Virus record (IMG/VR): IMGVR_UViG_3300033997_000092
Location: 186,001-250,000 of that record
DNA: 64,000 nucleotides
Reading direction: 5' to 3' (one strand)
Part shown: positions 41,301 to 58,551 of the stretch, one piece after another
How the letters are laid out: each line of letters begins with the position of its first letter
Position numbering within the stretch: position 1 is the stretch's first letter
Notes under the pieces: generated by a model
The model's database searches: none
The model's input: only the letters and a program-made list of their open reading frames with translations
Told to the model about the DNA's origin: nothing
Position numbers and translations under genes: made by a program

Positions 41301-43010
41301 AGCATCAGGTCCTTCGATGTTAATGCTCAACAAATCTATCTGTGGAAATTCCACATTCAAATAGTCTGTTTTCTTTATCGTTTCTTCCTTGTCCACATAT
41401 ATAAAATCGAGGACCAACTTATAGTCTTCACCGGCGGCTGTAGCAAGGAAAATGTTCTGATCGTTTACTTCGACCATGCCTACACGCGAAGATACCAAGA
41501 AGCCTTCGCTAACAACGCTGCCATCAGAAAACAATATGTCGGCGTACACTTTGTAGTAGTTGCCTTGATTGAAGTCTGTTACAGTAGTCTCTGTTGCAAT
41601 ATTACCGTACTGGTCAAATGTAACCAAAGTGTAGGCAGGCTGTATTTCTACAGGAATAGGACTTACCAAATTCTCGACTATCAGAATTTGCTTGTTAGCA
41701 CTCAACTCAGCACCATCAAAAGCACGATACAGGACCTGCATCAATACATTCTGGTCTTGGATAACACGTTTAGCCCGGATAGTAGATGTGTCCAACTCCG
41801 CATACTGGTCGCTGTCCAGTGACCACACGATGTTTTCAGTGTCTTGAATAGTGAAAGTGTTGTTGCCTATCTTACCTAACAACTCATACTTCTCAGATGC
41901 ACCTGGTTTAAGAACACTGGCACCTTTTATAACAAGTGAATCAGGCTTAATCGGAATACCGTACGCCAGCACAACTATGTTCTTGGATATTTCGGTACCC
42001 ATAAACGTAGCTATTACTGTTGTTGATTGGCTGATGCCTGTTTGTGGGTCACGAAACATTGTAGTAGGCTTCGTCTGCGTCATTAATCCCGCCGTGTCCG
42101 ACAGGGTGTTAGGAATCACAGTTGTTACTGTAGTGTCATCCCAAAACACCTTAACATAGACATTGTATTCCGTAGAAGCTGATACTACGTTTGGTACCAT
42201 AAGCTCAACACGCTCTATCCCAGGAGTCTCCAGCCGAGCAAAGTCTTTTGGATAGAACATGGCTGACATACTGACATACAGGTATGTTTTGGAATACAGG
42301 CCAATGTAAATATCTTTGATTACTTCTTCTATTGGAGCAAACTTGTAGAACAGTTCCGATATTCTGTAATCAACAAGAGCCTCGACTATTTCTGGATCAT
42401 CTGTGTCAGGATTTAATTCGCGTGACATCAATGCCATCAATTGGTTGCCAATAGCTACTTTCTGTGCTTCGTCCAGCTTGTCGTAATCCAGACGGCGACG
42501 CACGTACTCCAAATCACCCGCACCCAAGTTGATGCTCAGATCTTCTGCTAGGTTAGCTCCATCAACAACAAGGTTAACGTGCGATGTGCTGAACCAACTA
42601 CCGCCGTCGATATTCAGTTTGCCTGGAACAGGACTGAAGTTCACATAGTCTTGAGAAAACAAGTTCTGCACTTGGAATCCGCGGTTCAACAGAAAGCTGA
42701 TGAATTTTGGATATACAGGAGTGTTGTTAATCTCGCTGTACTTGGACAGTTGGTAGAAGCCTTTGCGAATATTACTTCCGTTTATCTCAAGGATATCACG
42801 GTGAATATCAAAGCCTATGTGCCGAATCATTTCATCTATAATTTCAGGATTAGTATTCCTGTCGATTGCCCGTAAGTTTTCCAACATACGGATGAACTGT
42901 TTGACGTTTTCTTCTGTGTAATCGTGGATGATGTCATAGAGTCTGACCCATGCAGGTTCTTCCTCACGCATCAACTCTACCAACATATCAGATAGGCGTT
43001 TAGATGTCAT
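38370..43010 (-). CDS. Baseplate wedge protein (gpI/gp7-like N-terminus) with tandem Ig-like domains
   Basis: Follows the gp6-like gene. N-terminal LR.ID...IGFD..ISFLLN pattern; repeated L.I.GP..V.EG...[YF]....W domains. Confidence 0.6.
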   Translation of the reverse strand: MTSKRLSDMLVELMREEEPAWVRLYDIIHDYTEENVKQFIRMLENLRAIDRNTNPEIIDEMIRHIGFDIHRDILEINGSNIRKGFYQLSKYSEINNTPVYPKFISFLLNRGFQVQNLFSQDYVNFSPVPGKLNIDGGSWFSTSHVNLVVDGANLAEDLSINLGAGDLEYVRRRLDYDKLDEAQKVAIGNQLMALMSRELNPDTDDPEIVEALVDYRISELFYKFAPIEEVIKDIYIGLYSKTYLYVSMSAMFYPKDFARLETPGIERVELMVPNVVSASTEYNVYVKVFWDDTTVTTVIPNTLSDTAGLMTQTKPTTMFRDPQTGISQSTTVIATFMGTEISKNIVVLAYGIPIKPDSLVIKGASVLKPGASEKYELLGKIGNNTFTIQDTENIVWSLDSDQYAELDTSTIRAKRVIQDQNVLMQVLYRAFDGAELSANKQILIVENLVSPIPVEIQPAYTLVTFDQYGNIATETTVTDFNQGNYYKVYADILFSDGSVVSEGFLVSSRVGMVEVNDQNIFLATAAGEDYKLVLDFIYVDKEETIKKTDYLNVEFPQIDLLSINIEGPDAVVEGRVARFIAIANWSNGQRSIINQADWYSTGGNVDNQDVLNVNIDSTGVAQMPLVTDNSVGLVRVSTQRYTDYQTITAQKFVTIQKNSRDLIGILTDVANTINEGQSVQMRFTARWSTDSRTEVLPTQVIVYGDDALTQILATATNVGNALQFQSFSQIEIENNPDFQFIDAETGLTHPMVMLKYTEGPDKVQGAIHIKAVYTNGNVQQYVVPVVAIPRIPKVERIESTIPLQLAEGNRYFFPTIGYYDNGETQEVNATWMGYDQMGETDNLPININNGQFPLDRIVEALIGIDRTTIEQMAIDNENLSVDQVRKLIQGEPIFANPSNRPVTGQTWPSKLGILMAQYDGVLLNRTLIQTRYIDEDETIQLVGKFYAQEVTQPLTVVNAPLQPHDRIDSYYISGPVEIEANESMMYSYALVMDYDDEGEEYPVSSDWEIDFYRDVDFDQQRELIRYLVEVDGKEDILPMSSDGSGTRVSVDMLSKIDMEEILPIASVVDIDGDGYLYPKMNVDARLILITNYDDGISTLTETLNIYMKKINSILRGLNMKITGPSGLISYDFKSLILDEPNQWAFDSLDGTLYYQLSVDLERTDNPVAGPPPGLVLWRAEPTGNGVSLDEATGRLYIAPQSDDSQVTLVASYTEEFRETEESAEVFTETVEARYVITVTASKALDIIELIGPNFAQDDTVFYPNVRVLRRDGSTAIAADVLSWEIVNGPKGLEVNDRFSFKIPRLDTDTTMTLKAIGREGQREITRDFVFNLLAGFVPEDLLVDANSPGYKDNSVINLVAMLKLRNNPTPIDVTSACIWMLDTKMTGLSIERNTGRLTTPYVEQDTYIDIRCVYVLGGFRQEKKFRILLQSSFSIYWTAGFNVINTTYFNLIWSENKFKRLTSVDTGKFTVLPNSTDYLYFACPKVLVPLRMAAVPSINPDVDWGNLEPGVDVVRTYLDGMTETWIIFKSVKRGFGQAEFSVAFKR

Positions 43011-44463
43011 TCAATGCACCTTTTCTTTCTGTGTACTTGACTAACACTGTGACTTGGTTAGGCGCAATGTATTCAAGTTTTGACCTGGGTTCAATGGGTT
43101 GGATAGGCTCTAATACACGAACATAGTCCAAACCTTCGTAGCGTTTCTTATCAGCACCGAATGTAGCAAGGTCTTTCAAGTCGCTGATTTCTAACTTGCG
43201 TCCAAGCACACCACGGCGGCGCCTGAAGTAATCGGCTATTGCTTGCTCGGTACGGGCTTTCCATGTTTCCCGTGATTGGTCTTCGTTGATGTATACTTCC
43301 ATGACAATGTTAGTCAGTATGCGCTCTGGGTTACATGGCAGTATCATTACATGCTTGTTTTTAATCTTTTCTGCCCATGCCAAGAACTTCGTCCATTGTC
43401 CTGATTGAGGGTTAGGATTAGTGCCTCCCCAACTGCTTGTGCTTTTCGGCAGCACACATACACGCACTACGTTCATGTAGGTCAAATCATCAGGGGCTAT
43501 GTCACGCTGGCCTTGAATAACAACGTCAGCCACATCCGGGTACATGCCTATATTACCCAACCATGAATCATGTCGATCAAGATTGCGTTTTGATTGGAAC
43601 ACATAAGGTGCGTACATTTTAAGTACGTCTGTATCCATCGGCTCACTTCCACCAACAGAAGCTTCGTCAGTGATACCACCTATAGTAGTATCGTTCTCAT
43701 AGCGTACCCGCACACCGCTGGTTCCGATATTGCCAGATTCACCAGAAGTAAGAACATATCGTACTACAATACGATCACTGCTATTTAAACGCACACCAAA
43801 TTGGCCGTTACCGAACATCAAGCTCACATCACCTTCAGCGGTTGTGTTTGGAATGTACATGGGTTCATCGGCATCAACATCGAATATGCTGTCGTAAGGA
43901 ACAAAAGCTTGTCGAGTACCACTTACAGGATTCTCGCTGTATACAAACATATCGTCCATTGATACAACGTGTCCCGGTACACCAAGTACAATCTCAGGGA
44001 AGTCCAAATCCACATTGCCCAAGTTGAATGTTTTGAGTTGTATGGTACCTTGTCCCATGATTACTTTACGTGATTCACTTGGACGCAACATAACGCTTTC
44101 ACGGTTGTAGAAAGGCAAACCGTTTATAGTAAATGCACTGAACTCGGGAATAGATTTGTTCACAGTGCTGTTGTTGCGTAATGTGACTGTTACCGTGCTG
44201 CCTGTCTTACGATTCAGTGTTTGTCCTAAATCACGGGCGTTTGCAAGTACGCTGCTTGCACGGCGCGCTCTACGCATAAATGCTTCACGGAAAGCAAAGT
44301 TGATATATGCTTGGTTGACTTCAGTGCTACCTGCTAAGGCATCTGCAATAAAGATAGCCAGGCGGCTTTTGCTTTTATCAGACCATACATAATCGGAGGC
44401 AAAGCGTGTAAGGATAGCCTGAACGTGTTCCTCAAATGACGCTGCGTTTATAATTGGGTTCAT
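43000..44463 (-). CDS. Baseplate wedge subunit (T4 gp6 / P2 gpJ-like)
   Basis: EAFMRRARRASSV..A..LG, MFGNGQFG, VRYVLTSGESGNIG, GGSEP..D.LK..AP; follows the gp25-like gene. Confidence 0.85.
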   Translation of the reverse strand: MNPIINAASFEEHVQAILTRFASDYVWSDKSKSRLAIFIADALAGSTEVNQAYINFAFREAFMRRARRASSVLANARDLGQTLNRKTGSTVTVTLRNNSTVNKSIPEFSAFTINGLPFYNRESVMLRPSESRKVIMGQGTIQLKTFNLGNVDLDFPEIVLGVPGHVVSMDDMFVYSENPVSGTRQAFVPYDSIFDVDADEPMYIPNTTAEGDVSLMFGNGQFGVRLNSSDRIVVRYVLTSGESGNIGTSGVRVRYENDTTIGGITDEASVGGSEPMDTDVLKMYAPYVFQSKRNLDRHDSWLGNIGMYPDVADVVIQGQRDIAPDDLTYMNVVRVCVLPKSTSSWGGTNPNPQSGQWTKFLAWAEKIKNKHVMILPCNPERILTNIVMEVYINEDQSRETWKARTEQAIADYFRRRRGVLGRKLEISDLKDLATFGADKKRYEGLDYVRVLEPIQPIEPRSKLEYIAPNQVTVLVKYTERKGALNDI

Positions 44464-44467
44464 GTTG

Positions 44468-44926
44468 TTATCCTAATTTCTGTAATCCGAATGAAACTTT
44501 CTTGCCTGTTACTTCCAAACGTGGAATATCTACTTTGAGTTCACACACGTAGGTGCTAGTGCCGTAGTCCATTCCAATATCAATAGTGTCGATGTACACA
44601 CCAAGGTCACCACTTGCTGTACGGTCGGCTGCCGTTTGTATAACAGTTAAGATTTCGTCCCGTGTTATTGTGTCGAATGGCTCAAACAACAAGTCCATTA
44701 ACCTACGCACTCCCCACTCAGGTCTCCACCAGCGGCTGCCTCTTGGAGTAGATAGTAGCAACAAGAATTGTTGTACTTCTGCTTCGCCGTCATAAACAAA
44801 CTCGTCACCTTTCTTGCCAATATCAATATTGACATCACGGAATACATACGTTCCTTTATTCGTAGTTTCTTCCATTGACTCACGGGCAGCGACCTGTTGT
44901 TCATGCGTTTTAATAGTTCTGAACAT
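44468..44926 (-). CDS. Baseplate gp25/gpW-like protein
   Basis: LLLSTPRGSRWWRPEWGV...LFEP is the GPW_gp25 signature. Confidence 0.85.
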   Translation of the reverse strand: MFRTIKTHEQQVAARESMEETTNKGTYVFRDVNIDIGKKGDEFVYDGEAEVQQFLLLLSTPRGSRWWRPEWGVRRLMDLLFEPFDTITRDEILTVIQTAADRTASGDLGVYIDTIDIGMDYGTSTYVCELKVDIPRLEVTGKKVSFGLQKLG

Positions 44927-45216
44927 TACCCTGCTCCTACGTTGCTTGAACCACCCATCGAAGTATCTCCACAGGTAGTTTTATCTCCCATACGTGTGAC
45001 GCCACGTTTATTAACAAAAACTTTGGAAGAACCTGTTGCTGTAGGAACGTGACAGCTTCCATTACAGCAGTGTAGCTTGTATTTATCTCCAGTACGCACA
45101 GCAGGAAGACCGTTAACAAACACATTGTTACTGCCTTGAATTGCTGGTACAGGAGGAAAGCAAGGACTGTGTCCCATCGTCATGTCAGGTCCTTTACGGA
45201 TGACTGGTTTACCCAT
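44926..45216 (-). CDS. PAAR-type spike tip protein (T4 gp5.4-like)
   Basis: GH.C.P....GS.NVFVNG.PAVR.GD...H...C H...GSS.VFVN...R.GD..CG. Confidence 0.92.
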   Translation of the reverse strand: MGKPVIRKGPDMTMGHSPCFPPVPAIQGSNNVFVNGLPAVRTGDKYKLHCCNGSCHVPTATGSSKVFVNKRGVTRMGDKTTCGDTSMGGSSNVGAG

Positions 45217-48875: not shown

Positions 48876-50072
48876 ATGAATTTTCAACAATCGAATCCTA
48901 TTATCATCGGCGGCGATACTGAATTCAATGAAGTAAACTGGCTCGATAACAGCTATATCATGGCAGCCGACCGTATTATGGTGGAAGGCGTTCGTAGTGG
49001 TAATCGCACAGGCGTAAACACTTACAAAGTATTCGGCCACTTTATCAATACTAACTTGATGGAAGGCTACCCTCTGCTTACAACAAAGCAAGTATTCACC
49101 CGTCCTATGTTCCATGAACTGATTTGGATGTTGAACGGTGAAACAAATATTCAATACTTGCTGGACAATGATGTACATATTTGGGACGGCTGGGCTAACA
49201 CTAACGGTGACTTAGGTCCTGTATACGGTGAACAGTGGCGTAATCGTGAAGACACTCAGATCCTGATGCGTAACGACCCGTACTACGAACAACGCCTGTC
49301 GTACTATGAAAGCAACGGCTACACAAACGTAGCTACCAACCCAACGCTGGATGTGTACAGCCGTCGCATTGACCAAATTCAGGTAGCATTGGATCGTTTA
49401 AAAACAAACCCAGACTGCCGCCGCATTATCGTAGATGCGTGGAATCCTGGTCTGCTGCCTACAGACGAGCATCCAACAAAACAAGCTGAACAGGGCCGTC
49501 AAGCATTACCTGCATGTCATGCGTTCTTCCAATTCGGCTCCAGTGAACATCATCGTAACGATATTACTATCGATGACTTAGGCATACTGAACATCTATCG
49601 TGTAGGCAACAAAGTCTATATGAGCGGTGTTGAAATTGATGTCCAGTTGTCTGATGTTGAGCAAATGGATGAAGTAGGTCTGTTGCAGCTTATCCGCCGC
49701 TACAAAGATAGCCGTGTTCCATTTAAGCGTATGTTAGATACTCACCTGCACTTGCGTAGTAGTGATGTGTTCTTGGGTCTGCCGTTTAATATCAGTTCCT
49801 ACGCTGCTTTGTCTGGTTTGTTCTGTGCTGTTCTTGGTATGATACCCCGCGGTCTGACACTCAGCTTTGGTGACATGCACATTTATAGCAACCACGTTGA
49901 GCCTTTGCAGAAGCAAGCGAATAACTTGGAAAACACTAAGTACCCACCAAAGCTTGTAACTATTGGTGTTGGTCCTGAGCAAAACGCCGATTTGAAGAAC
50001 CTCAGCATTGATTGTTTCCGTGTGTTGCAATACAGTCACTGTGGTAAAATCACAGCCGACGTGGCCGTGTAA
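48876..50072 (+). CDS. thyA: Thymidylate synthase (with two insertions)
   Basis: PLLTTK, ELIWML.G, LGPVYG.QWR, IDQI, RRIIVDAWNP, ALPACH, RSSDVFLGLPFN (dUMP-specifying Asn), GDMHIYSNH. Confidence 0.96.
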   Translation: MNFQQSNPIIIGGDTEFNEVNWLDNSYIMAADRIMVEGVRSGNRTGVNTYKVFGHFINTNLMEGYPLLTTKQVFTRPMFHELIWMLNGETNIQYLLDNDVHIWDGWANTNGDLGPVYGEQWRNREDTQILMRNDPYYEQRLSYYESNGYTNVATNPTLDVYSRRIDQIQVALDRLKTNPDCRRIIVDAWNPGLLPTDEHPTKQAEQGRQALPACHAFFQFGSSEHHRNDITIDDLGILNIYRVGNKVYMSGVEIDVQLSDVEQMDEVGLLQLIRRYKDSRVPFKRMLDTHLHLRSSDVFLGLPFNISSYAALSGLFCAVLGMIPRGLTLSFGDMHIYSNHVEPLQKQANNLENTKYPPKLVTIGVGPEQNADLKNLSIDCFRVLQYSHCGKITADVAV

Positions 50073-55155: not shown

Positions 55156-55599
55156 ATGGCAAATTTCAACAAACAGGCAGCAACTGTTGTCAGTGGCTTC
55201 CCTGGAATCGGCAAATCACACTTCTTTAATCGCCAACAAGAATTAGGTCTGAAGGTGATGGACAGCGACAGTTCAAAATTCCCAAAAGACAACTTTCCAC
55301 AGAACTACATGCAACACATTGGTGAGGCTATGTATCAGTGCGACTACTTGTTGGTAAGTTCACATGATGCGGTACGCCGTGCTTTGGTAGATGCGGGTAT
55401 AGTTTATACATTGGTCTATCCGCATATTTCACTGAAAGATGAATATATGCGTCGGTATAAGGAGCGCGGTTCTCCTCAGCCGTTCTTAGATCTAATGGAA
55501 AAGAACTGGGACAGTTTTGTTACTGGTTGTATTAACCAAACAGGCTGCAAGCATGTTGTGCTTCAAGCTGGCCAATATATGTCTGACGTAATAGGGTAG
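55156..55599 (+). CDS. P-loop NTPase / nucleotide kinase-like protein
   Basis: Walker A SGFPGIGKS, D.DSS, LLVSSH, LVYP. Confidence 0.8.
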   Translation: MANFNKQAATVVSGFPGIGKSHFFNRQQELGLKVMDSDSSKFPKDNFPQNYMQHIGEAMYQCDYLLVSSHDAVRRALVDAGIVYTLVYPHISLKDEYMRRYKERGSPQPFLDLMEKNWDSFVTGCINQTGCKHVVLQAGQYMSDVIG

Positions 55600-55603
55600 G
55601 CTT

Positions 55604-56320
55604 ATGCTCAGTGAACTGTTAAAATACCTACAGCAAAACACATCGTTGGCCATGCTGCCTGCGTGGTCTGAAGATCTTATGTATATGTCTAGTGAAGATT
55701 CTGATCACTTGCAGCGTACAGCAACCAGTGCTATGATGGAAACGTATAAGCTTTTGACTAATGCACTTCCACGTGTGTTCAGCAAAAGTATTGCATTATC
55801 TCAGGCACCAAACGAAAACACCCGTGTCACGTTTGACGTACTGAACGGTTGTGTTGAAGACTACACGGACATGATAAAGACTACATTTATCGCTCGTGGT
55901 CAACCGATAGTTGATTACATGGTTGCATCTATCCGCAATCAGGTTACAGATTTTGAAATGACTGTCAACTGTTTTATTTTAACTTATACAACTGTTGGTC
56001 CATTACTTAATCTAATCCGTACAGGACAATCTATTGAACTTGCCTTGTCTGTTTTAGAGTGTTTACCTTCGCACGATAATGAAAATGGACCAATATACTG
56101 TCCTGTACTGCCTCCAGGGCCAATAGAACTCTATGACTTAGTTGCTACAAGGCGTGGTTTTACTGTAGGCCAACGGGTTACAGAAATTGTTTCAAGGTAC
56201 GATTGCTTGGTAGCGCAATCAGGCAACAAAGAAATGTCACTTTACTGGGAAGCTTTGAAAAACTTACCAGGCAACAAAAAAGTTCTGGGGTCATTAGGCT
56301 ATGAAAACAACTGCAGGTGA
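55604..56320 (+). CDS. Hypothetical protein
   Basis: 238-aa ORF. Confidence 0.72.
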   Translation: MLSELLKYLQQNTSLAMLPAWSEDLMYMSSEDSDHLQRTATSAMMETYKLLTNALPRVFSKSIALSQAPNENTRVTFDVLNGCVEDYTDMIKTTFIARGQPIVDYMVASIRNQVTDFEMTVNCFILTYTTVGPLLNLIRTGQSIELALSVLECLPSHDNENGPIYCPVLPPGPIELYDLVATRRGFTVGQRVTEIVSRYDCLVAQSGNKEMSLYWEALKNLPGNKKVLGSLGYENNCR

Positions 56321-56999
56321 GTTGCGTAAACGCGGCTTCAATATTCCAGACAATATACCTGACTGCGCTACTACAGAACTCAACGGATACGGAGTTGGTA
56401 CTGTGTCAGCAGGCCATGACAATTCCCTTCAGGTAGACTTGCTTGCCAACTTGGGTCCTTTCGAGTGGGTATCGGCTACTGTTGTTGCTAAAGGTCCAGA
56501 CAAGATAACGCTTGACAAAACTCTATGGCCAGCTCCTCTGACTTTAGATCATGTCCAGCAGCGCACTCCAACAGAATGCCTGTCTGCCTGTATCGCTATG
56601 ATAACGCGCATACCTATTGACCGCGTAGTTGCGGACTTCCATGAGCGTTATAGGCGAGACTGGACTGTAAATGTATCTACATACTTCAACGAAATTGGTT
56701 TGAAGCATACGGTGCGTTCTGCTGTCGACCGTGTCATTGAAGAAGGCTTTGTGTATACAGCCCGTGTGTCTTCGCTGAATAATATCGGCGGCGGCCATGC
56801 TGTTGTAATACATAATTGCCCGGATGCTGGTTTCACTGTTTACGACCCAAACAAAGGTCGTCCTGATACCCGCTATTATGAGTTTGTTAAAACAGACGAT
56901 CCACTGTCTGAAACATTAACGTCCTACATTACTACAACCCAAATAGCTGAGCAGGATTTGCGTGTGTTCTGGGCAGCACAACAGGAGAAAATAGAATGA
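56301..56999 (+). CDS. C39-like papain-fold cysteine peptidase with N-terminal accessory domain
   Basis: QQRTPTEC..ACIAMI (Gln, Cys), GHAVV (His), VYDPN (Asp). Confidence 0.7.
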   Translation: MKTTAGELRKRGFNIPDNIPDCATTELNGYGVGTVSAGHDNSLQVDLLANLGPFEWVSATVVAKGPDKITLDKTLWPAPLTLDHVQQRTPTECLSACIAMITRIPIDRVVADFHERYRRDWTVNVSTYFNEIGLKHTVRSAVDRVIEEGFVYTARVSSLNNIGGGHAVVIHNCPDAGFTVYDPNKGRPDTRYYEFVKTDDPLSETLTSYITTTQIAEQDLRVFWAAQQEKIE

Positions 57000-58051
57000 G
57001 TCATTCTGGTCGTATCGAAAATGCGTTGACTAAGCTTAATGCGCTTGGTTGGACGTGTGAAGTCCACAACTTCAAAATTCCACAGTTCAGTATGCACGTT
57101 GACTATGATAACAAGCGTCTGGCAATCAACTGTCCGAAAGCATATCATACAGCGCAGATGCTGGACCACGTACACGATATTACTACTGTTGAAACTGAAT
57201 CTTTAAGTGGTCAGAAGTGTGTTGTTCGTGGCGCTTATGTTTATAGCTTTGTTGGTCTGGAAGTCTTTGAATACACTTCTCCAAACTCAGGCGACCATAA
57301 AGCATTTGCTAATCTGGTTCTTACTGGAATGCCACGCAGCATGTACACAGGTGAGTTTTTTCCTGAATCAGAAGACCGTGCTGTAATGCACATTGAAGTC
57401 GAAGGCGATGTCAATATCCAGACTCTGGACGCTGTCGTAGCTGCCGTACAGAACGCAACAGGTTATGTTCGTGAGAAGCCAACTATTCCAGGTCGCTACA
57501 ATGTTCGCCACATTGCTAAAGAAGGTCAACCTGAGTTTATCGGTGAAGAAGTTAACGTCTGGTTAGTTGAAGGCGTCCCTTACGTTGACTTAGACCCAGA
57601 CGGTAGCTGTCCAGTGTCCAGCGTACACGACGGTTTAGAATGGCAATTGATTGAAAAAGCAGACAGCCCTGTTGCTGAAGACGTTCAGGTATCTGTTTGT
57701 GTTCGCCGTTCAGACAGCACAATCGTTACAGCCGACGATGCTCCTGGTAATGGTGGTGCACACCACGAATACAGTATCTCGACAGTACACGATCCTGAAC
57801 TCAACTCCTCGTTTAAGATTGCAGTTTTGCGATTCCAGAATGGCGGAGTAGCAGAAGTCGGTGTTAACGGTATTCAGATTGAAGACCTGTTAGCTATGAG
57901 CGCACATCGTCTGGAGTGTTTCCAAGCAGGTCCGTTTGCCTGTATTCAAAATCAATCAGCGCTGGAAAGCATTAAACATGCACTTGCTACATTAGACGCA
58001 CGTACTGCTGACCGCAAGGCTCGTAATGTAGAAGGCAAACAAGTAGTCTAA
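56996..58051 (+). CDS. Tad1/Acb2-family immune-signal sponge domain fused to a ~235-aa unknown N-terminal region
   Basis: C-terminal GNGGAHHEY ... RFQNG...GVNG..IEDLL...RLECFQAGPF ... RTADRKARNVEG matches the Tad1/Acb2 consensus. Confidence 0.82.
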   Translation: MSHSGRIENALTKLNALGWTCEVHNFKIPQFSMHVDYDNKRLAINCPKAYHTAQMLDHVHDITTVETESLSGQKCVVRGAYVYSFVGLEVFEYTSPNSGDHKAFANLVLTGMPRSMYTGEFFPESEDRAVMHIEVEGDVNIQTLDAVVAAVQNATGYVREKPTIPGRYNVRHIAKEGQPEFIGEEVNVWLVEGVPYVDLDPDGSCPVSSVHDGLEWQLIEKADSPVAEDVQVSVCVRRSDSTIVTADDAPGNGGAHHEYSISTVHDPELNSSFKIAVLRFQNGGVAEVGVNGIQIEDLLAMSAHRLECFQAGPFACIQNQSALESIKHALATLDARTADRKARNVEGKQVV

Positions 58052-58055
58052 CCGT

Positions 58056-58082
58056 AAGAGGGAGCAATTTGCTCCCTCTTTT
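58056..58082 (+). terminator. Intrinsic terminator
   Basis: AAGAGGGAGC-aattt-GCTCCCTCTT then TT, after the stop at 58051. Confidence 0.85.
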
Positions 58083-58103
58083 CGTTTCTATGGTTCAGAG
58101 TCA

Positions 58104-58188
58104 TTATCTCTGTTATCCGTAGCAAAAACAGGACACTATAAAACCGACTGTTTTGAGCTATAGTTATCTCTGTTATCCGTTGCATAAA
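58104..58188 (+). repeat. Two 25-bp direct repeats (23/25 identical), 60-bp period
   Basis: TTATCTCTGTTATCCGT(A/T)GCA(A/T)AAA at 58104-58128 and 58164-58188. Confidence 0.85.
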
Positions 58189-58195
58189 TAGGCTA

Positions 58196-58225
58196 TTGAC
58201 ACCCACCCATATACTCTGCTATAAT
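58196..58225 (+). promoter_or_regulatory. Consensus sigma70 (early) promoter with extended -10
   Basis: TTGACA (58196-58201), 18-nt spacer, TG-c-TATAAT (58220-58225). Confidence 0.9.
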
Positions 58226-58257
58226 AAGCCCATACGTTGAACAGGAGAAAGCATATT

Positions 58258-58551
58258 ATGCTGCCTATACAGATAGCTACTGCAATCGTGATAAACAACA
58301 ACGTACACCGCGCAATATCAGGCGTTAACAGAACACGTTTGGGTATTGGAGCTGGTGGCTTTGTTGAACACCGAATCGTTCTTACTCCGCTCGGTCAGAA
58401 GTGCATGGACTTAGTGAAGCAGGACAGAGAGGCAATGCGTTCGGTTATTTACCAACAGCGTGTTGCTGAATTGAAAGCGCGTGGTATTACAAGACCGGGC
58501 GATATTATGAAATATACATACGATATGTTTGGAGGAAAAGTAAGATGGTAA
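58258..58551 (+). CDS. Hypothetical early protein
   Basis: ATG with SD AGGAG just downstream of the promoter. Confidence 0.75.
   Translation: MLPIQIATAIVINNNVHRAISGVNRTRLGIGAGGFVEHRIVLTPLGQKCMDLVKQDREAMRSVIYQQRVAELKARGITRPGDIMKYTYDMFGGKVRW

What the first reader, a model, noticed from the sequence alone, without database searches (positions are those of the whole stretch)
56996..58051. Tad1/Acb2-type immune-signal sponge fused to a large unknown N-terminal region
Seen: the last ~117 aa (57701-58051) carry the family motifs, with no internal start codon and SD, so it is a true 351-aa fusion. Two segments deviate from the consensus I recall: RENAxA reads IQNQSA, and EEALMW[LM] reads KHALATL. 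Known: Tad1 and Acb2 are ~90-125-aa stand-alone oligomers that sequester Thoeris gcADPR and CBASS cyclic oligonucleotides. Inference: the ~235-aa addition (perhaps two domains) could be a second anti-defence activity multimerised by the sponge, or an effector that uses the host alarm signal as its switch. The substitutions may shift ligand range.
Basis: partly seen in the sequence, partly recalled or inferred. Interest (0 to 1): 0.76.

Follow-up and report, generated by a model that had tools for sequence, protein, structure and literature searches.

The report
Tad1 sponge fused to partner protein
A 261-kb jumbo phage encodes one 351-residue protein that joins a Tad1-type immune-signal sponge to two domains of unknown function, and the first of these also sits next to Tad1 genes in other jumbo phages, so it is a candidate new counter-defence partner.

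Summary
Window 56996-58051 (+) is one intact 351-aa ORF. Residues 236-349 are a Tad1-family domain (solved Tad1 structures E about 1e-12; phrog_2428 E 9e-28). No solved Acb2 chain matches.

The ORF has no internal start with a ribosome-binding site. Three diverged metagenomic orthologues keep the fusion, with dN/dS 0.06-0.2 in every part.

The four residues that bind gcADPR and cyclic dinucleotides in CbTad1 are conserved. Both residues that hold cyclic trinucleotides (R90, T97) are replaced (I317, E324). phiKZ gp184 and every other N-extended Tad1 I examined show the same loss.

The N-terminal region has two modules:
- **N1 (aa 1-123)** models as a zincin-like fold without HExxH. Related jumbo phages encode it as a separate 132-150-aa gene. 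In two other lineages that gene lies directly upstream of a Tad1 gene, once with an ATGA overlap.
- **N2 (aa 124-235)** is acidic and has no detectable relatives outside the fusion clade.

The premise that Tad1 is always stand-alone is outdated. phiKZ gp184 is a 230-aa capsid-anchored, injected Tad1, but its N-terminus is unrelated to this one.

I read the protein as a modular counter-defence protein. What N1 and N2 do is inferred, not shown. It is a new variant of a known kind.

The parts
56983..56987 (+). Shine-Dalgarno AGGAG, 8 nt before the ATG
   Evidence: Read directly from the sequence.
56996..58051 (+). Whole fusion gene, 351 aa plus stop. It is the last gene of a + strand operon that starts with RNase H (45348) and contains thyA (48876-50072).
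   Evidence: Intact in independent samples. dN/dS 0.07-0.16 overall.
56996..57364 (+). N1 module (aa 1-123): a compact alpha/beta domain with a zincin-like fold and no HExxH. It is the same family as the separate 132-150-aa genes of related jumbo phages.
   Evidence: Homologues. Model pLDDT 77.5, pTM 0.72. Fold matches to ImmA/IrrE, M48 and SprT-like proteins are weak but agree across libraries. No Pfam, PHROG or PDB sequence hit.
57365..57700 (+). N2 module (aa 124-235): acidic (pI 4.2, net charge -15), predicted mostly beta. Found only in the fusion clade, apart from a short HIxVEGDxNIQT motif at its start. The hinge at aa ~124 carries a 22-aa insertion in two orthologues.
   Evidence: Not modelled with confidence (pLDDT < 50). 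No family hit. No similarity to the gp184 N-terminus.
57701..58048 (+). Tad1-family sponge domain (aa 236-351): beta strands followed by a two-helix hairpin.
   Evidence: PDB phmmer E ~1e-12; phrog_2428 E 8.7e-28; Foldseek to CbTad1/CmTad1 E 4.5e-5, probability 1.0.
57920..57922 (+). F309, equivalent to CbTad1 F82 (gcADPR / cyclic-dinucleotide pocket); conserved.
   Evidence: Alignments. F in 72 of 74 distinct relatives. Residue role from bioRxiv 10.1101/2023.11.15.567273.
57944..57946 (+). I317 in place of CbTad1 R90 / CmTad1 R88 (the Arg that holds the cyclic-trinucleotide phosphate and lies in the hexamer interface).
57950..57952 (+). N319, equivalent to CbTad1 N92 (pocket); conserved.
   Evidence: N in 72 of 74.
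57965..57967 (+). E324 in place of CbTad1 T97 / CmTad1 T95 (second cyclic-trinucleotide contact).
58001..58015 (+). R336 and R340, equivalent to CbTad1 R109 and R113 (pocket); conserved.
   Evidence: R in 74 of 74 at both positions.
58056..58080 (+). Intrinsic terminator (11-bp stem, 6 G-C pairs, T-run) that ends the operon right after the gene.
   Evidence: In Tad1-less relatives the separate N1 gene is followed by a stem-loop at the same position, read from the sequence.
56301..56999 (+). Context: upstream 232-aa gene for a C39-like papain-fold Cys peptidase. Its stop overlaps the fusion's start codon (ATGA).
   Evidence: phrog_4049 E 5.4e-30; weak Pfam C39 match. Present upstream of the fusion in L003-L005. 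Absent upstream of separate N1 genes.

Best explanation
The gene encodes a modular counter-defence protein of a PaBG-like jumbo phage (261,032 bp, direct terminal repeats).

**C-terminal domain (well supported).** The last 116 residues are a Tad1-family sponge. By homology it should sequester Thoeris gcADPR and/or CBASS cyclic dinucleotides in the dimer-interface pocket, because all four pocket residues are kept. It should no longer bind cyclic trinucleotides such as cA3, because both residues that hold the trinucleotide phosphates are replaced by Ile and Glu. Those residues also lie in the hexamer interface, so the domain may work as a dimer rather than a hexamer.

**N-terminal region (inferred).** It arose by joining a separate jumbo-phage gene, N1, to a Tad1 gene that lay directly downstream, with an acidic N2 segment between them. 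N1 is a compact, catalytically dead zincin-like domain. N1 and Tad1 are neighbours, translationally coupled or fused in three lineages. I therefore infer that N1(-N2) supplies a second activity against host defence, binding another signal or a defence protein, and is made in a fixed 1:1 ratio with the sponge. This follows the pattern of the known sponge-sponge fusions.

**Shown:** domain identity, residue pattern, gene fusion, gene linkage, purifying selection.
**Inferred:** ligand range, oligomeric state, and any function of N1 and N2.
For: - **Tad1 identity:**
- **Pocket residues conserved:** F309, N319, R336 and R340 are present here and nearly invariant in 74 distinct relatives. The cyclic-trinucleotide residues are replaced. 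Residue roles come from bioRxiv 10.1101/2023.11.15.567273.
- **Real fusion:**
- **N1 as an independent gene:** at least 10 distinct 132-150-aa proteins occupy the same syntenic spot as the last gene of the RNase H-thyA operon.
- **N1-Tad1 linkage outside the fusion clade:** in L001, on a 329-kb contig, an N1 gene lies 14 nt upstream of a 379-aa Tad1-domain gene. In L019 and L020, the latter a 319.5-kb contig, an N1 gene overlaps a 153-aa Tad1 gene by ATGA.
- **Trace of a fused ancestor:** the 147-150-aa N1-only proteins keep the motif that begins N2.
- **Precedent:** fusions between sponge families are common and led to the discovery of a new sponge family (bioRxiv 10.1101/2025.07.12.664507).
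- **Gene setting:** the gene sits in a nucleotide-metabolism/unknown-function operon, not a structural one.
Against:
- N1 and N2 match no known sponge or anti-defence family.
- N1's fold matches are weak (best Z 7.0, TM about 0.5), in the range the tool calls common for unrelated models.
- N2 could not be modelled.
- Four N1-only relatives have no Tad1 within 5-10 kb, so N1 does not need Tad1.
- The linked lineages are few (three), and all are jumbo phages that share this operon, so the linkage could partly reflect shared ancestry.
- The one characterised N-extended Tad1, phiKZ gp184, uses its extension for capsid anchoring, not for a second activity.
Confidence: 0.45

Rival explanations
1. 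Virion delivery, as in phiKZ gp184. N1-N2 anchors the protein inside the capsid. A head protease cuts in the acidic linker, and the freed Tad1 domain is injected with the DNA, so the sponge is present before any phage gene is expressed.
For: - phiKZ gp184 (230 aa) has the same layout. It is a minor capsid protein of the inner vertex complex, cleaved by the head protease, and its C-terminal Tad1 is reported to be injected (PMC11297242; bioRxiv 10.1101/2025.11.23.690004; PMC13282480).
- The C-terminal domains share 44% identity over 71 aa.
- The operon carrying the gene lacks the phage's strong early sigma70-type promoter. This fits non-early expression.
- Acidic, variable linkers lie at aa ~124 and ~221-235.
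Against: - N1-N2 shows no similarity to the gp184 N-terminus (hhalign probability 0.6%).
- tblastn found no homologue of phiKZ protease gp175 or its virion RNA polymerase subunits. There was also no PF12699 inner-body protein and no T4-type PF03420 protease in the genome.
- N1 is a compact globular domain that also exists as a separate gene. The gp184 N-terminus is reported to be woven into the capsid lattice, and its sequence is low in complexity.
- The gene is in a non-structural operon.
- No virion proteome exists for this uncultured phage.
Confidence: 0.2
2. Accessory scaffold only. N1-N2 has no activity of its own against defence. It only changes the sponge's assembly, solubility, localisation or stability, for example by replacing hexamer formation with another oligomer.
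For: - The residues that build both the hexamer interface and the cA3 site are lost.
- Among nearest relatives, none of 4 domains with >= 60-aa N-terminal extensions keep the canonical R/T pair, against 40 of 63 short forms (Fisher p 0.023, not corrected for relatedness).
- The same loss is seen in phiKZ gp184, PhiPA3 gp217, L001 and P0008.
- N-terminal partners of Tad1 domains are very diverse: cyclophilin, HAD-like and unknown.
Against: - N1 is kept under strong purifying selection (dN/dS ~0.09).
- N1 persists as a separate gene in relatives with no nearby Tad1. That argues for a function of its own.
Confidence: 0.15
3. Signal-switched effector. The Tad1 domain senses the host alarm nucleotide and switches on an enzymatic N-terminal effector.
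For: The only support is the architecture: a ligand-binding domain fused to other domains.
Against: - No catalytic motif was found. N1 has a zincin-like fold but lacks HExxH, and its His residues are not conserved in the P0007/P0019 branch.
- N2 has no enzyme signature.
- No toxin or effector family was hit.
Confidence: 0.03
4. Artefact or decaying gene. Two genes were joined by an assembly or sequencing error, or the ORF is a pseudogene.
For: In relatives the two genes are separated only by an ATGA overlap, so a single-base error could mimic a fusion.
Against: - The fusion is present in four diverged proteins on independent contigs.
- Independent samples show no indels.
- dN/dS is 0.06-0.2 in all parts, with near-saturated synonymous change.
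- An extra ~110-aa N2 module lies between the two parts, and a frameshift would not create that.
Confidence: 0.01

Closest known systems
phiKZ gp184 / Tad1 (PDB 8y6v chain I; jumbo phage phiKZ)
   Same: Both come from jumbo phages and place a Tad1-family domain at the C-terminus of a longer protein. The domains share 44% identity over 71 aa. Both lack the canonical R/T cyclic-trinucleotide site (E/N in gp184, I/E here) and keep the N and two R pocket residues.
   Different: - The N-terminal parts are unrelated and differ in length (about 150 vs 235 aa).
- gp184 is a proven capsid component that is cleaved by gp175. Here no such protease, virion data or structural-gene context was found.
- The N1 module exists as a separate gene in relatives.
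Stand-alone Tad1 sponges (CbTad1 7uav/8kbe-h, CmTad1 8kbb-d, SBSphiJ7 Tad1)
   Same: Homologous over the whole domain (E ~1e-12). They share the GGAxHxY strand motif and the helical hairpin, and the pocket residues F82/N92/R109/R113 are identical.
   Different: - They are 115-142-aa single-domain proteins that form hexamers and also bind cA3/cAAG through R90/T97.
- Here those two residues are I and E, the Pfam hairpin model does not match, and 235 extra residues precede the domain.
Sponge-sponge fusions (Acb4-Tad2, Sequestin PF21825 fused to Tad2 or Acb4; bioRxiv 10.1101/2025.07.12.664507)
   Same: A known sponge domain is fused in one polypeptide to a small domain that more often occurs alone in phages. 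The same 'guilt by fusion' reasoning applies to N1.
   Different: The partner here is not a known sponge family and has not been tested. The sponge is Tad1, not Tad2 or Acb4. N1 has a zincin-like alpha/beta fold, unlike the helical Sequestin.
Acb2 (anti-CBASS 2)
   Same: The same general mechanism: sequestering cyclic nucleotides as an oligomer.
   Different: No detectable sequence match to any solved Acb2 chain. The domain belongs to Tad1.
ImmA/IrrE (M78), M48 and SprT-like minimal zincin peptidases (compared with N1 only)
   Same: The predicted topology is helix, three-stranded sheet, long helix. Weak matches agree across four structure libraries.
   Different: N1 has no HExxH, and no metal ligands are conserved across the N1 family. 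There is no sequence-level match. The scores lie in the range expected for a shared common arrangement.

Membership tests
Tad1 (Thoeris anti-defence 1) sponge family | Significant sequence similarity to experimentally solved Tad1 proteins over the whole domain | tested here: met
   phmmer E 1.4e-12 to 3.5e-12 to 8kbb, 7uav and 8kbe over query 233-348. phrog_2428 E 8.7e-28.
Tad1 (Thoeris anti-defence 1) sponge family | Tad1 fold (N-terminal strands plus two-helix hairpin) | tested here: met
   The top 20 Foldseek PDB hits are all CbTad1/CmTad1 (E 4.5e-5 to 1.9e-3, probability 1.0). Caveat: this part of the model has pLDDT of only 30-70.
Tad1 (Thoeris anti-defence 1) sponge family | gcADPR / cyclic-dinucleotide pocket residues (CbTad1 F82, N92, R109, R113) | tested here: met
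   F309, N319, R336 and R340. Conserved in 72-74 of 74 distinct relatives.
Tad1 (Thoeris anti-defence 1) sponge family | Cyclic-trinucleotide site and hexamer-interface residues (CbTad1 R90/T97; CmTad1 R88/T95) | tested here: not met
   I317 and E324. Neighbouring contacts A91 and M92 are Q320 and S321. This is not disqualifying: only 35 of 74 distinct relatives have R/T, and phiKZ gp184 has E/N.
Tad1 (Thoeris anti-defence 1) sponge family | Match to Pfam PF24729 Acb2_Tad1_hairpin | tested here: inconclusive
   No hit at E <= 10 in the local Pfam copy, which does hit SBSphiJ7 Tad1. A precomputed PF24729.3 hit is on record for the 82%-identical P0002.
Tad1 (Thoeris anti-defence 1) sponge family | Homo-oligomer (dimer / hexamer) that binds and releases the signal unmodified; rescues phage from Thoeris | not testable with these tools
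   Needs protein biochemistry and plaque assays. No multimer modelling was available.
Acb2 | Sequence similarity to solved Acb2 proteins | tested here: not met
   No Acb2 chain among the PDB matches at E <= 1.
gp184-type capsid-anchored, injected Tad1 | C-terminal Tad1 domain preceded by a long N-terminal extension | tested here: met
   235-aa extension here. gp184 has the same order of parts.
gp184-type capsid-anchored, injected Tad1 | N-terminal region homologous to gp184's capsid-binding part | tested here: not met
   BLASTP finds nothing outside the Tad1 domain. phrog_22140 matches only through its C-terminal part. hhalign probability 0.6%.
gp184-type capsid-anchored, injected Tad1 | phiKZ-type head maturation protease and inner-body proteins in the same genome | tested here: not met
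   tblastn with phiKZ gp174-178 and gp180 gave no hit at E 1e-3. PF12699 and PF03420 were not found. Divergent homologues could have been missed.
gp184-type capsid-anchored, injected Tad1 | Presence in virions and proteolytic release of the C-terminal domain | not testable with these tools
   The phage is uncultured and known only from metagenomes.
Zincin metallopeptidases (for module N1) | Zincin fold | tested here: inconclusive
   VIA Z 7.0 to the ImmA/IrrE-like domain of 6cyj, and Z 3.6-4.0 to CapP, PprI and HtpX. ESM Atlas TM 0.46-0.52 to M78/M48 clusters. AFDB and BFVD hits at E 0.2-0.5.
Zincin metallopeptidases (for module N1) | HExxH metal-binding / catalytic motif on the active-site helix | tested here: not met
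   Helix 49-63 reads AYHTAQMLDHVHDIT. H51 and H58 are Y and R in P0007 and P0019.
Known sponge-sponge fusions | Fusion partner belongs to a known sponge family (Tad2, Acb4, Sequestin, Acb2) | tested here: not met
   No Pfam, PHROG or PDB hit for N1 or N2.

The most novel reading that the evidence does not exclude
N1 is the founding member of a new family of jumbo-phage counter-defence proteins, either a sponge for a different immune signal or an inhibitor or decoy of a defence protein. It comes to light through its repeated adjacency, translational coupling and fusion with Tad1. Joining it to Tad1 goes along with converting the two-ligand hexameric sponge into a single-pocket form that has given up cyclic-trinucleotide binding.
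Probability: 0.3. Interest if true: 0.75.

Novelty: new variant of a known kind. Interest (0 to 1): 0.55.

Why it matters
Tad1 was called the only anti-defence protein described in jumbo phages in a 2026 review (PMC13282480). This locus adds three things:

- **A second architecture.** It shows another, unrelated way in which a jumbo phage embeds a Tad1 domain in a larger protein.
- **A candidate partner.** It names a concrete module, N1, found in about 17 protein clusters and so far only in metagenomic contigs that share this operon. Its genetic coupling to Tad1 makes it a testable candidate for a new counter-defence function. A comparable fusion-based search found the Sequestin sponge family.
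- **A simple biochemical prediction.** The protein should bind gcADPR or cyclic dinucleotides but not cA3. It also suggests a possible rule: N-terminally extended Tad1 domains have lost the hexamer-dependent trinucleotide site.

Tried and rejected
**Searches for relatives of the N-terminal region**
- An exhaustive phmmer search with aa 1-235 against 1.84 billion representatives found only N1 relatives and nothing for N2.
- Word-indexed searches gave only the fusion clade and N1-only proteins.
- IMG/VR and JGI metagenome scans with N1 profiles returned only the window's own genome and L019/L020.
- GenBank phages have no match to the N-terminal 217 aa.
- PaBG and NCTB, the nearest named phages, have neither a Tad1 domain nor N1.

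**Searches for a known family**
- Pfam, PHROGs, a PDB profile search and the language-model atlas gave nothing significant for N1 or N2.

**Structure**
- The full-length AlphaFold model was poor (pLDDT 50), and only N1 and the helical hairpin were usable.
- Foldseek against the PDB with the N1 model gave no hit below E 0.7.

**Tests of the packaging idea**
- phiKZ protease and virion RNA polymerase, PF12699 and PF03420 were not found.
- hhalign of N2 against the gp184 N-terminus was negative.
- I looked for head-protease cleavage motifs ([SAG]-x-E or L-x-E) by eye. Candidates exist, but they are not consistently conserved, and I do not use them as evidence.

**Transcription class**
- A search for a shared middle or late promoter motif upstream of the operon gave nothing convincing.

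**Other**
- The upstream C39-like peptidase is not linked to separate N1 genes, so I could not support a role for it in processing.
- The final Nature version of Li et al. 2024 (PMC12159963) is not held. Statements about gp184 injection therefore rest on a preprint and a review that cite it.
Full report
**1. The observation**

Window 56996-58051 (+) is a single 351-aa ORF. It has an AGGAG ribosome-binding site 8 nt before the ATG.

The last ~115 residues match solved Tad1 proteins at E 1.4e-12 to 3.5e-12: CmTad1 8kbb, and CbTad1 7uav and 8kbe-h. They match phiKZ gp184 (8y6v chain I) at 1.2e-10 and phrog_2428 at 8.7e-28. The 20 best Foldseek PDB matches of the predicted model are all Tad1 chains. 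No solved Acb2 chain matched, so the domain is Tad1, not Acb2.

The local Pfam copy does not detect PF24729 (Acb2_Tad1_hairpin) in this protein, although it does in SBSphiJ7 Tad1. That model covers the helical hairpin, where this protein departs from the canonical RENAxA...EEALMW pattern.

**2. The fusion is real**

- None of the ten in-frame internal ATG/GTG/TTG codons has a Shine-Dalgarno-like sequence upstream.
- Three further proteins (P0002, P0003, P0004) on other metagenomic contigs have the same architecture. They are 68-82% identical over the N-terminal 235 aa.
- Contigs from independent subsurface, drinking-water and wastewater samples cover the gene with substitutions only and no indels.
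- Pairwise dN/dS is 0.09-0.10 for aa 1-123, 0.16 for aa 126-220 in the one comparison where dS was not saturated, and 0.06-0.20 for the Tad1 part.

**3. The genome**

The window is bases 186001-250000 of a 261,032-bp IMG/VR virus record. The record has direct terminal repeats and is estimated complete. Its GC content is 43.4%.

A 565-aa virion protein is 44% identical to one in Pseudomonas phage PaBG and phage NCTB, and about 36% identical to Erwinia and Dickeya jumbo phages. PaBG and NCTB have neither a Tad1 domain nor N1. The genome holds one Tad1 domain.

The gene is the last in a + strand operon that begins with RNase H and contains thymidylate synthase. A strong terminator follows at 58056-58080. 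After that comes a perfect sigma70-type promoter.

**4. The sponge domain in detail**

The residue roles come from bioRxiv 10.1101/2023.11.15.567273, combined with the HMMER and MAFFT alignments.

| CbTad1 residue | Role | Here |
|---|---|---|
| F82, N92, R109, R113 | gcADPR / cyclic-dinucleotide pocket | F309, N319, R336, R340 (all conserved) |
| R90, T97 (CmTad1 R88, T95) | hold the phosphates of cA3/cAAG; also in the hexamer interface | I317, E324 (both replaced) |
| A91, M92 | neighbouring trinucleotide contacts | Q320, S321 |

A hydrophobic and an acidic residue in place of the Arg/Thr pair should abolish trinucleotide binding. They may also prevent hexamer formation. This is inference.

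The change is not unique to this protein. Among 74 distinct domains from the 80 nearest IMG/VR loci plus references, the pocket residues are nearly invariant (F 72, N 72, R 74, R 74), but only 35 carry R/T. phiKZ gp184 has E/N, and other phages of Gram-negative hosts also lack the pair.

**5. The N-terminal region is two modules**

*N1 (aa 1-123).* The exhaustive search and a profile search found N1 as a separate 132-150-aa protein in at least ten distinct clusters at 62-68% identity, and in two more at about 34%. On long contigs these genes occupy the same position as the fusion. They are the last gene of the RNase H...thyA operon and are followed by a terminator hairpin.

A hinge at about aa 124 carries a 22-aa insertion in P0003 and P0004.

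The N1 model is usable (pLDDT 77.5, pTM 0.72). Its topology is helix, three strands, long helix, then more strands. Four structure libraries point, weakly but in agreement, to minimal zincin-like peptidases:
- the ImmA/IrrE-like domain of 6cyj at Z 7.0, and CapP, PprI and HtpX at Z 3.6-4.0;
- M78/M48 clusters in the ESM Atlas at TM 0.46-0.52;
- IrrE, ImmA and M48 entries in AFDB and SprT-like proteins in BFVD at E 0.2-0.5.

These scores are within the range the tools call common for unrelated models. The helix that would carry HExxH reads AYHTAQMLDHVHDIT, and its His residues are not conserved in the P0007/P0019 branch. At most, N1 is a catalytically dead zincin-like domain. No sequence family matches it.

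*N2 (aa 124-235).* N2 is very acidic (pI 4.2, net charge -15). It is predicted mostly beta at low confidence. It is found only in the fusion clade, apart from its first motif (HIxVEGDxNIQT), which also ends the 147-150-aa N1-only proteins.

**6. N1 and Tad1 are genetically linked**

This is the main new result.

- In L001 (329-kb contig), a separate N1 gene (P0007) ends 14 nt before a 379-aa gene. That gene's C-terminus is a Tad1 domain 41% identical to this one, and its N-terminus is unrelated.
- In L019 and L020 (the latter a 319.5-kb IMG/VR contig), a 145-aa N1 gene overlaps the start of a 153-aa Tad1 gene by ATGA.
- In the window clade the two are fused.
- In four N1-only relatives no Tad1 lies within 5-10 kb.

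The most distant N1 branch and the window clade both have Tad1 directly downstream, and N1-only proteins keep the start of N2. The simplest history is therefore an ancestral N1-Tad1 pair that became fused in one lineage and lost Tad1 in its sister lineage. This is inference from few lineages.

**7. What is already known**

The premise that Tad1 proteins are always small and stand-alone is outdated.
- phiKZ gp184 is a 230-aa protein with a C-terminal Tad1 domain. It is a minor capsid protein of the inner vertex-binding complex and a substrate of head protease gp175 (PMC11297242).
- Its freed C-terminus is described as injected in the next infection, and it is named Tad1 (bioRxiv 10.1101/2025.11.23.690004; PMC13282480).
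- Sponge-sponge fusions (Acb4-Tad2; Sequestin with Tad2 or Acb4) are common and were used to discover a new sponge family (bioRxiv 10.1101/2025.07.12.664507).

Among the 80 nearest IMG/VR loci, 7 of 77 complete ORFs are 200 aa or longer. These include a cyclophilin-Tad1 fusion (Pfam PF00160, E 2e-44). Elsewhere there is a HAD_SAK_2-Tad1 fusion (P0008). Fusion as such is not new; this partner is.

**8. Choosing between mechanisms**

*gp184-like packaging.* This reading has the appeal of a jumbo-phage precedent, but every test I could run was negative or silent:
- There is no similarity between N1-N2 and the gp184 N-terminus.
- No phiKZ-type protease, virion RNA polymerase or inner-body protein was detected.
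- The gene context is not structural.

*Second-activity reading.* This is supported by N1 being a small, separately maintained, strongly constrained gene that is repeatedly coupled to Tad1, and by the fusion precedent among sponges. It has no direct functional evidence.

I rank the modular counter-defence reading first (0.45 for the whole statement; about 0.85 for the sponge assignment alone). Packaging is second (0.2) and a pure scaffold role third (0.15).

A side observation fits either of the last two. None of the Tad1 domains with extensions of 60 aa or more keeps the R/T pair (0 of 4, against 40 of 63 short forms; Fisher p 0.023, not corrected for relatedness). The window clade, gp184, PhiPA3 gp217, L001 and P0008 also lack it.

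**9. Verdict**

- This is a new variant of a known kind: a Tad1 sponge embedded in a larger protein. It has a new partner module whose linkage to Tad1 makes it worth testing.

Nothing in this work needed to be referred.

Noticed in passing
window 58165-58225 (partial copy 58104-58140); six more copies elsewhere in the genome: Seven + strand copies share a ~36-bp conserved element ending in TTGAC(A), followed by 17-18 nt and TATAAT. The window copy is a 12/12 sigma70 match with an extended -10. These are probably the phage's early promoters with a shared upstream element, which suggests early transcription by host RNA polymerase, unlike phiKZ. Metagenome contigs break at this repeat.
   Followed up: partly
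window 56301-56999 (+): A 232-aa C39-like papain-fold Cys peptidase (phrog_4049 E 5e-30) whose stop overlaps the fusion's start codon (ATGA). It is present only in the fusion clade (L003-L005) and not upstream of separate N1 genes. Whether it processes the fusion protein is unknown.
   Followed up: partly
L054/L055 1760-2860; P0008; L083 1895-2845; L086 2138-2824; L001 6438-7577; P0009: The Tad1 domain is fused to other, unrelated partners: a cyclophilin PPIase (366 aa), a HAD_SAK_2 domain (311 aa), and unknown 115-250-aa N-terminal regions. One protein has a ~100-aa C-terminal extension instead.
   Followed up: partly
80 IMG/VR loci L019-L098, plus L001, L002, L018 and P0008: N-terminally extended Tad1 domains lack the canonical R/T cyclic-trinucleotide site: 0 of 4 with extensions of 60 aa or more, against 40 of 63 short forms (p 0.023, not corrected for phylogeny).
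   Followed up: partly
L020 1947-2842 (also L019); L001 6001-7577: A separate N1 gene lies directly upstream of a Tad1 gene in 319-329-kb jumbo-phage contigs. In L019/L020 the two overlap by ATGA, so a single-base change could fuse them.
   Followed up: yes
window 55156-55599 (+): A 147-aa protein with a P-loop-like GFPGIGKSHF motif. It matches only the first 149 of 243 positions of phrog_4182 (E 2e-60, unknown function).
   Followed up: no
window 44926-45216 (-), 44468-44926 (-), 43000-44463 (-): These 96-, 152- and 487-aa genes mirror the layout in L103, where the 96-aa gene carries a PAAR motif (PF05488). This is probably the tail spike tip at the start of the minus-strand structural block. 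I did not check it directly.
   Followed up: no
window 56301-58300: The phage or close strains occur in subsurface, drinking-water and wastewater metagenomes from several studies. Wastewater libraries labelled RNA-Seq hold it too, but this does not show transcription.
   Followed up: partly
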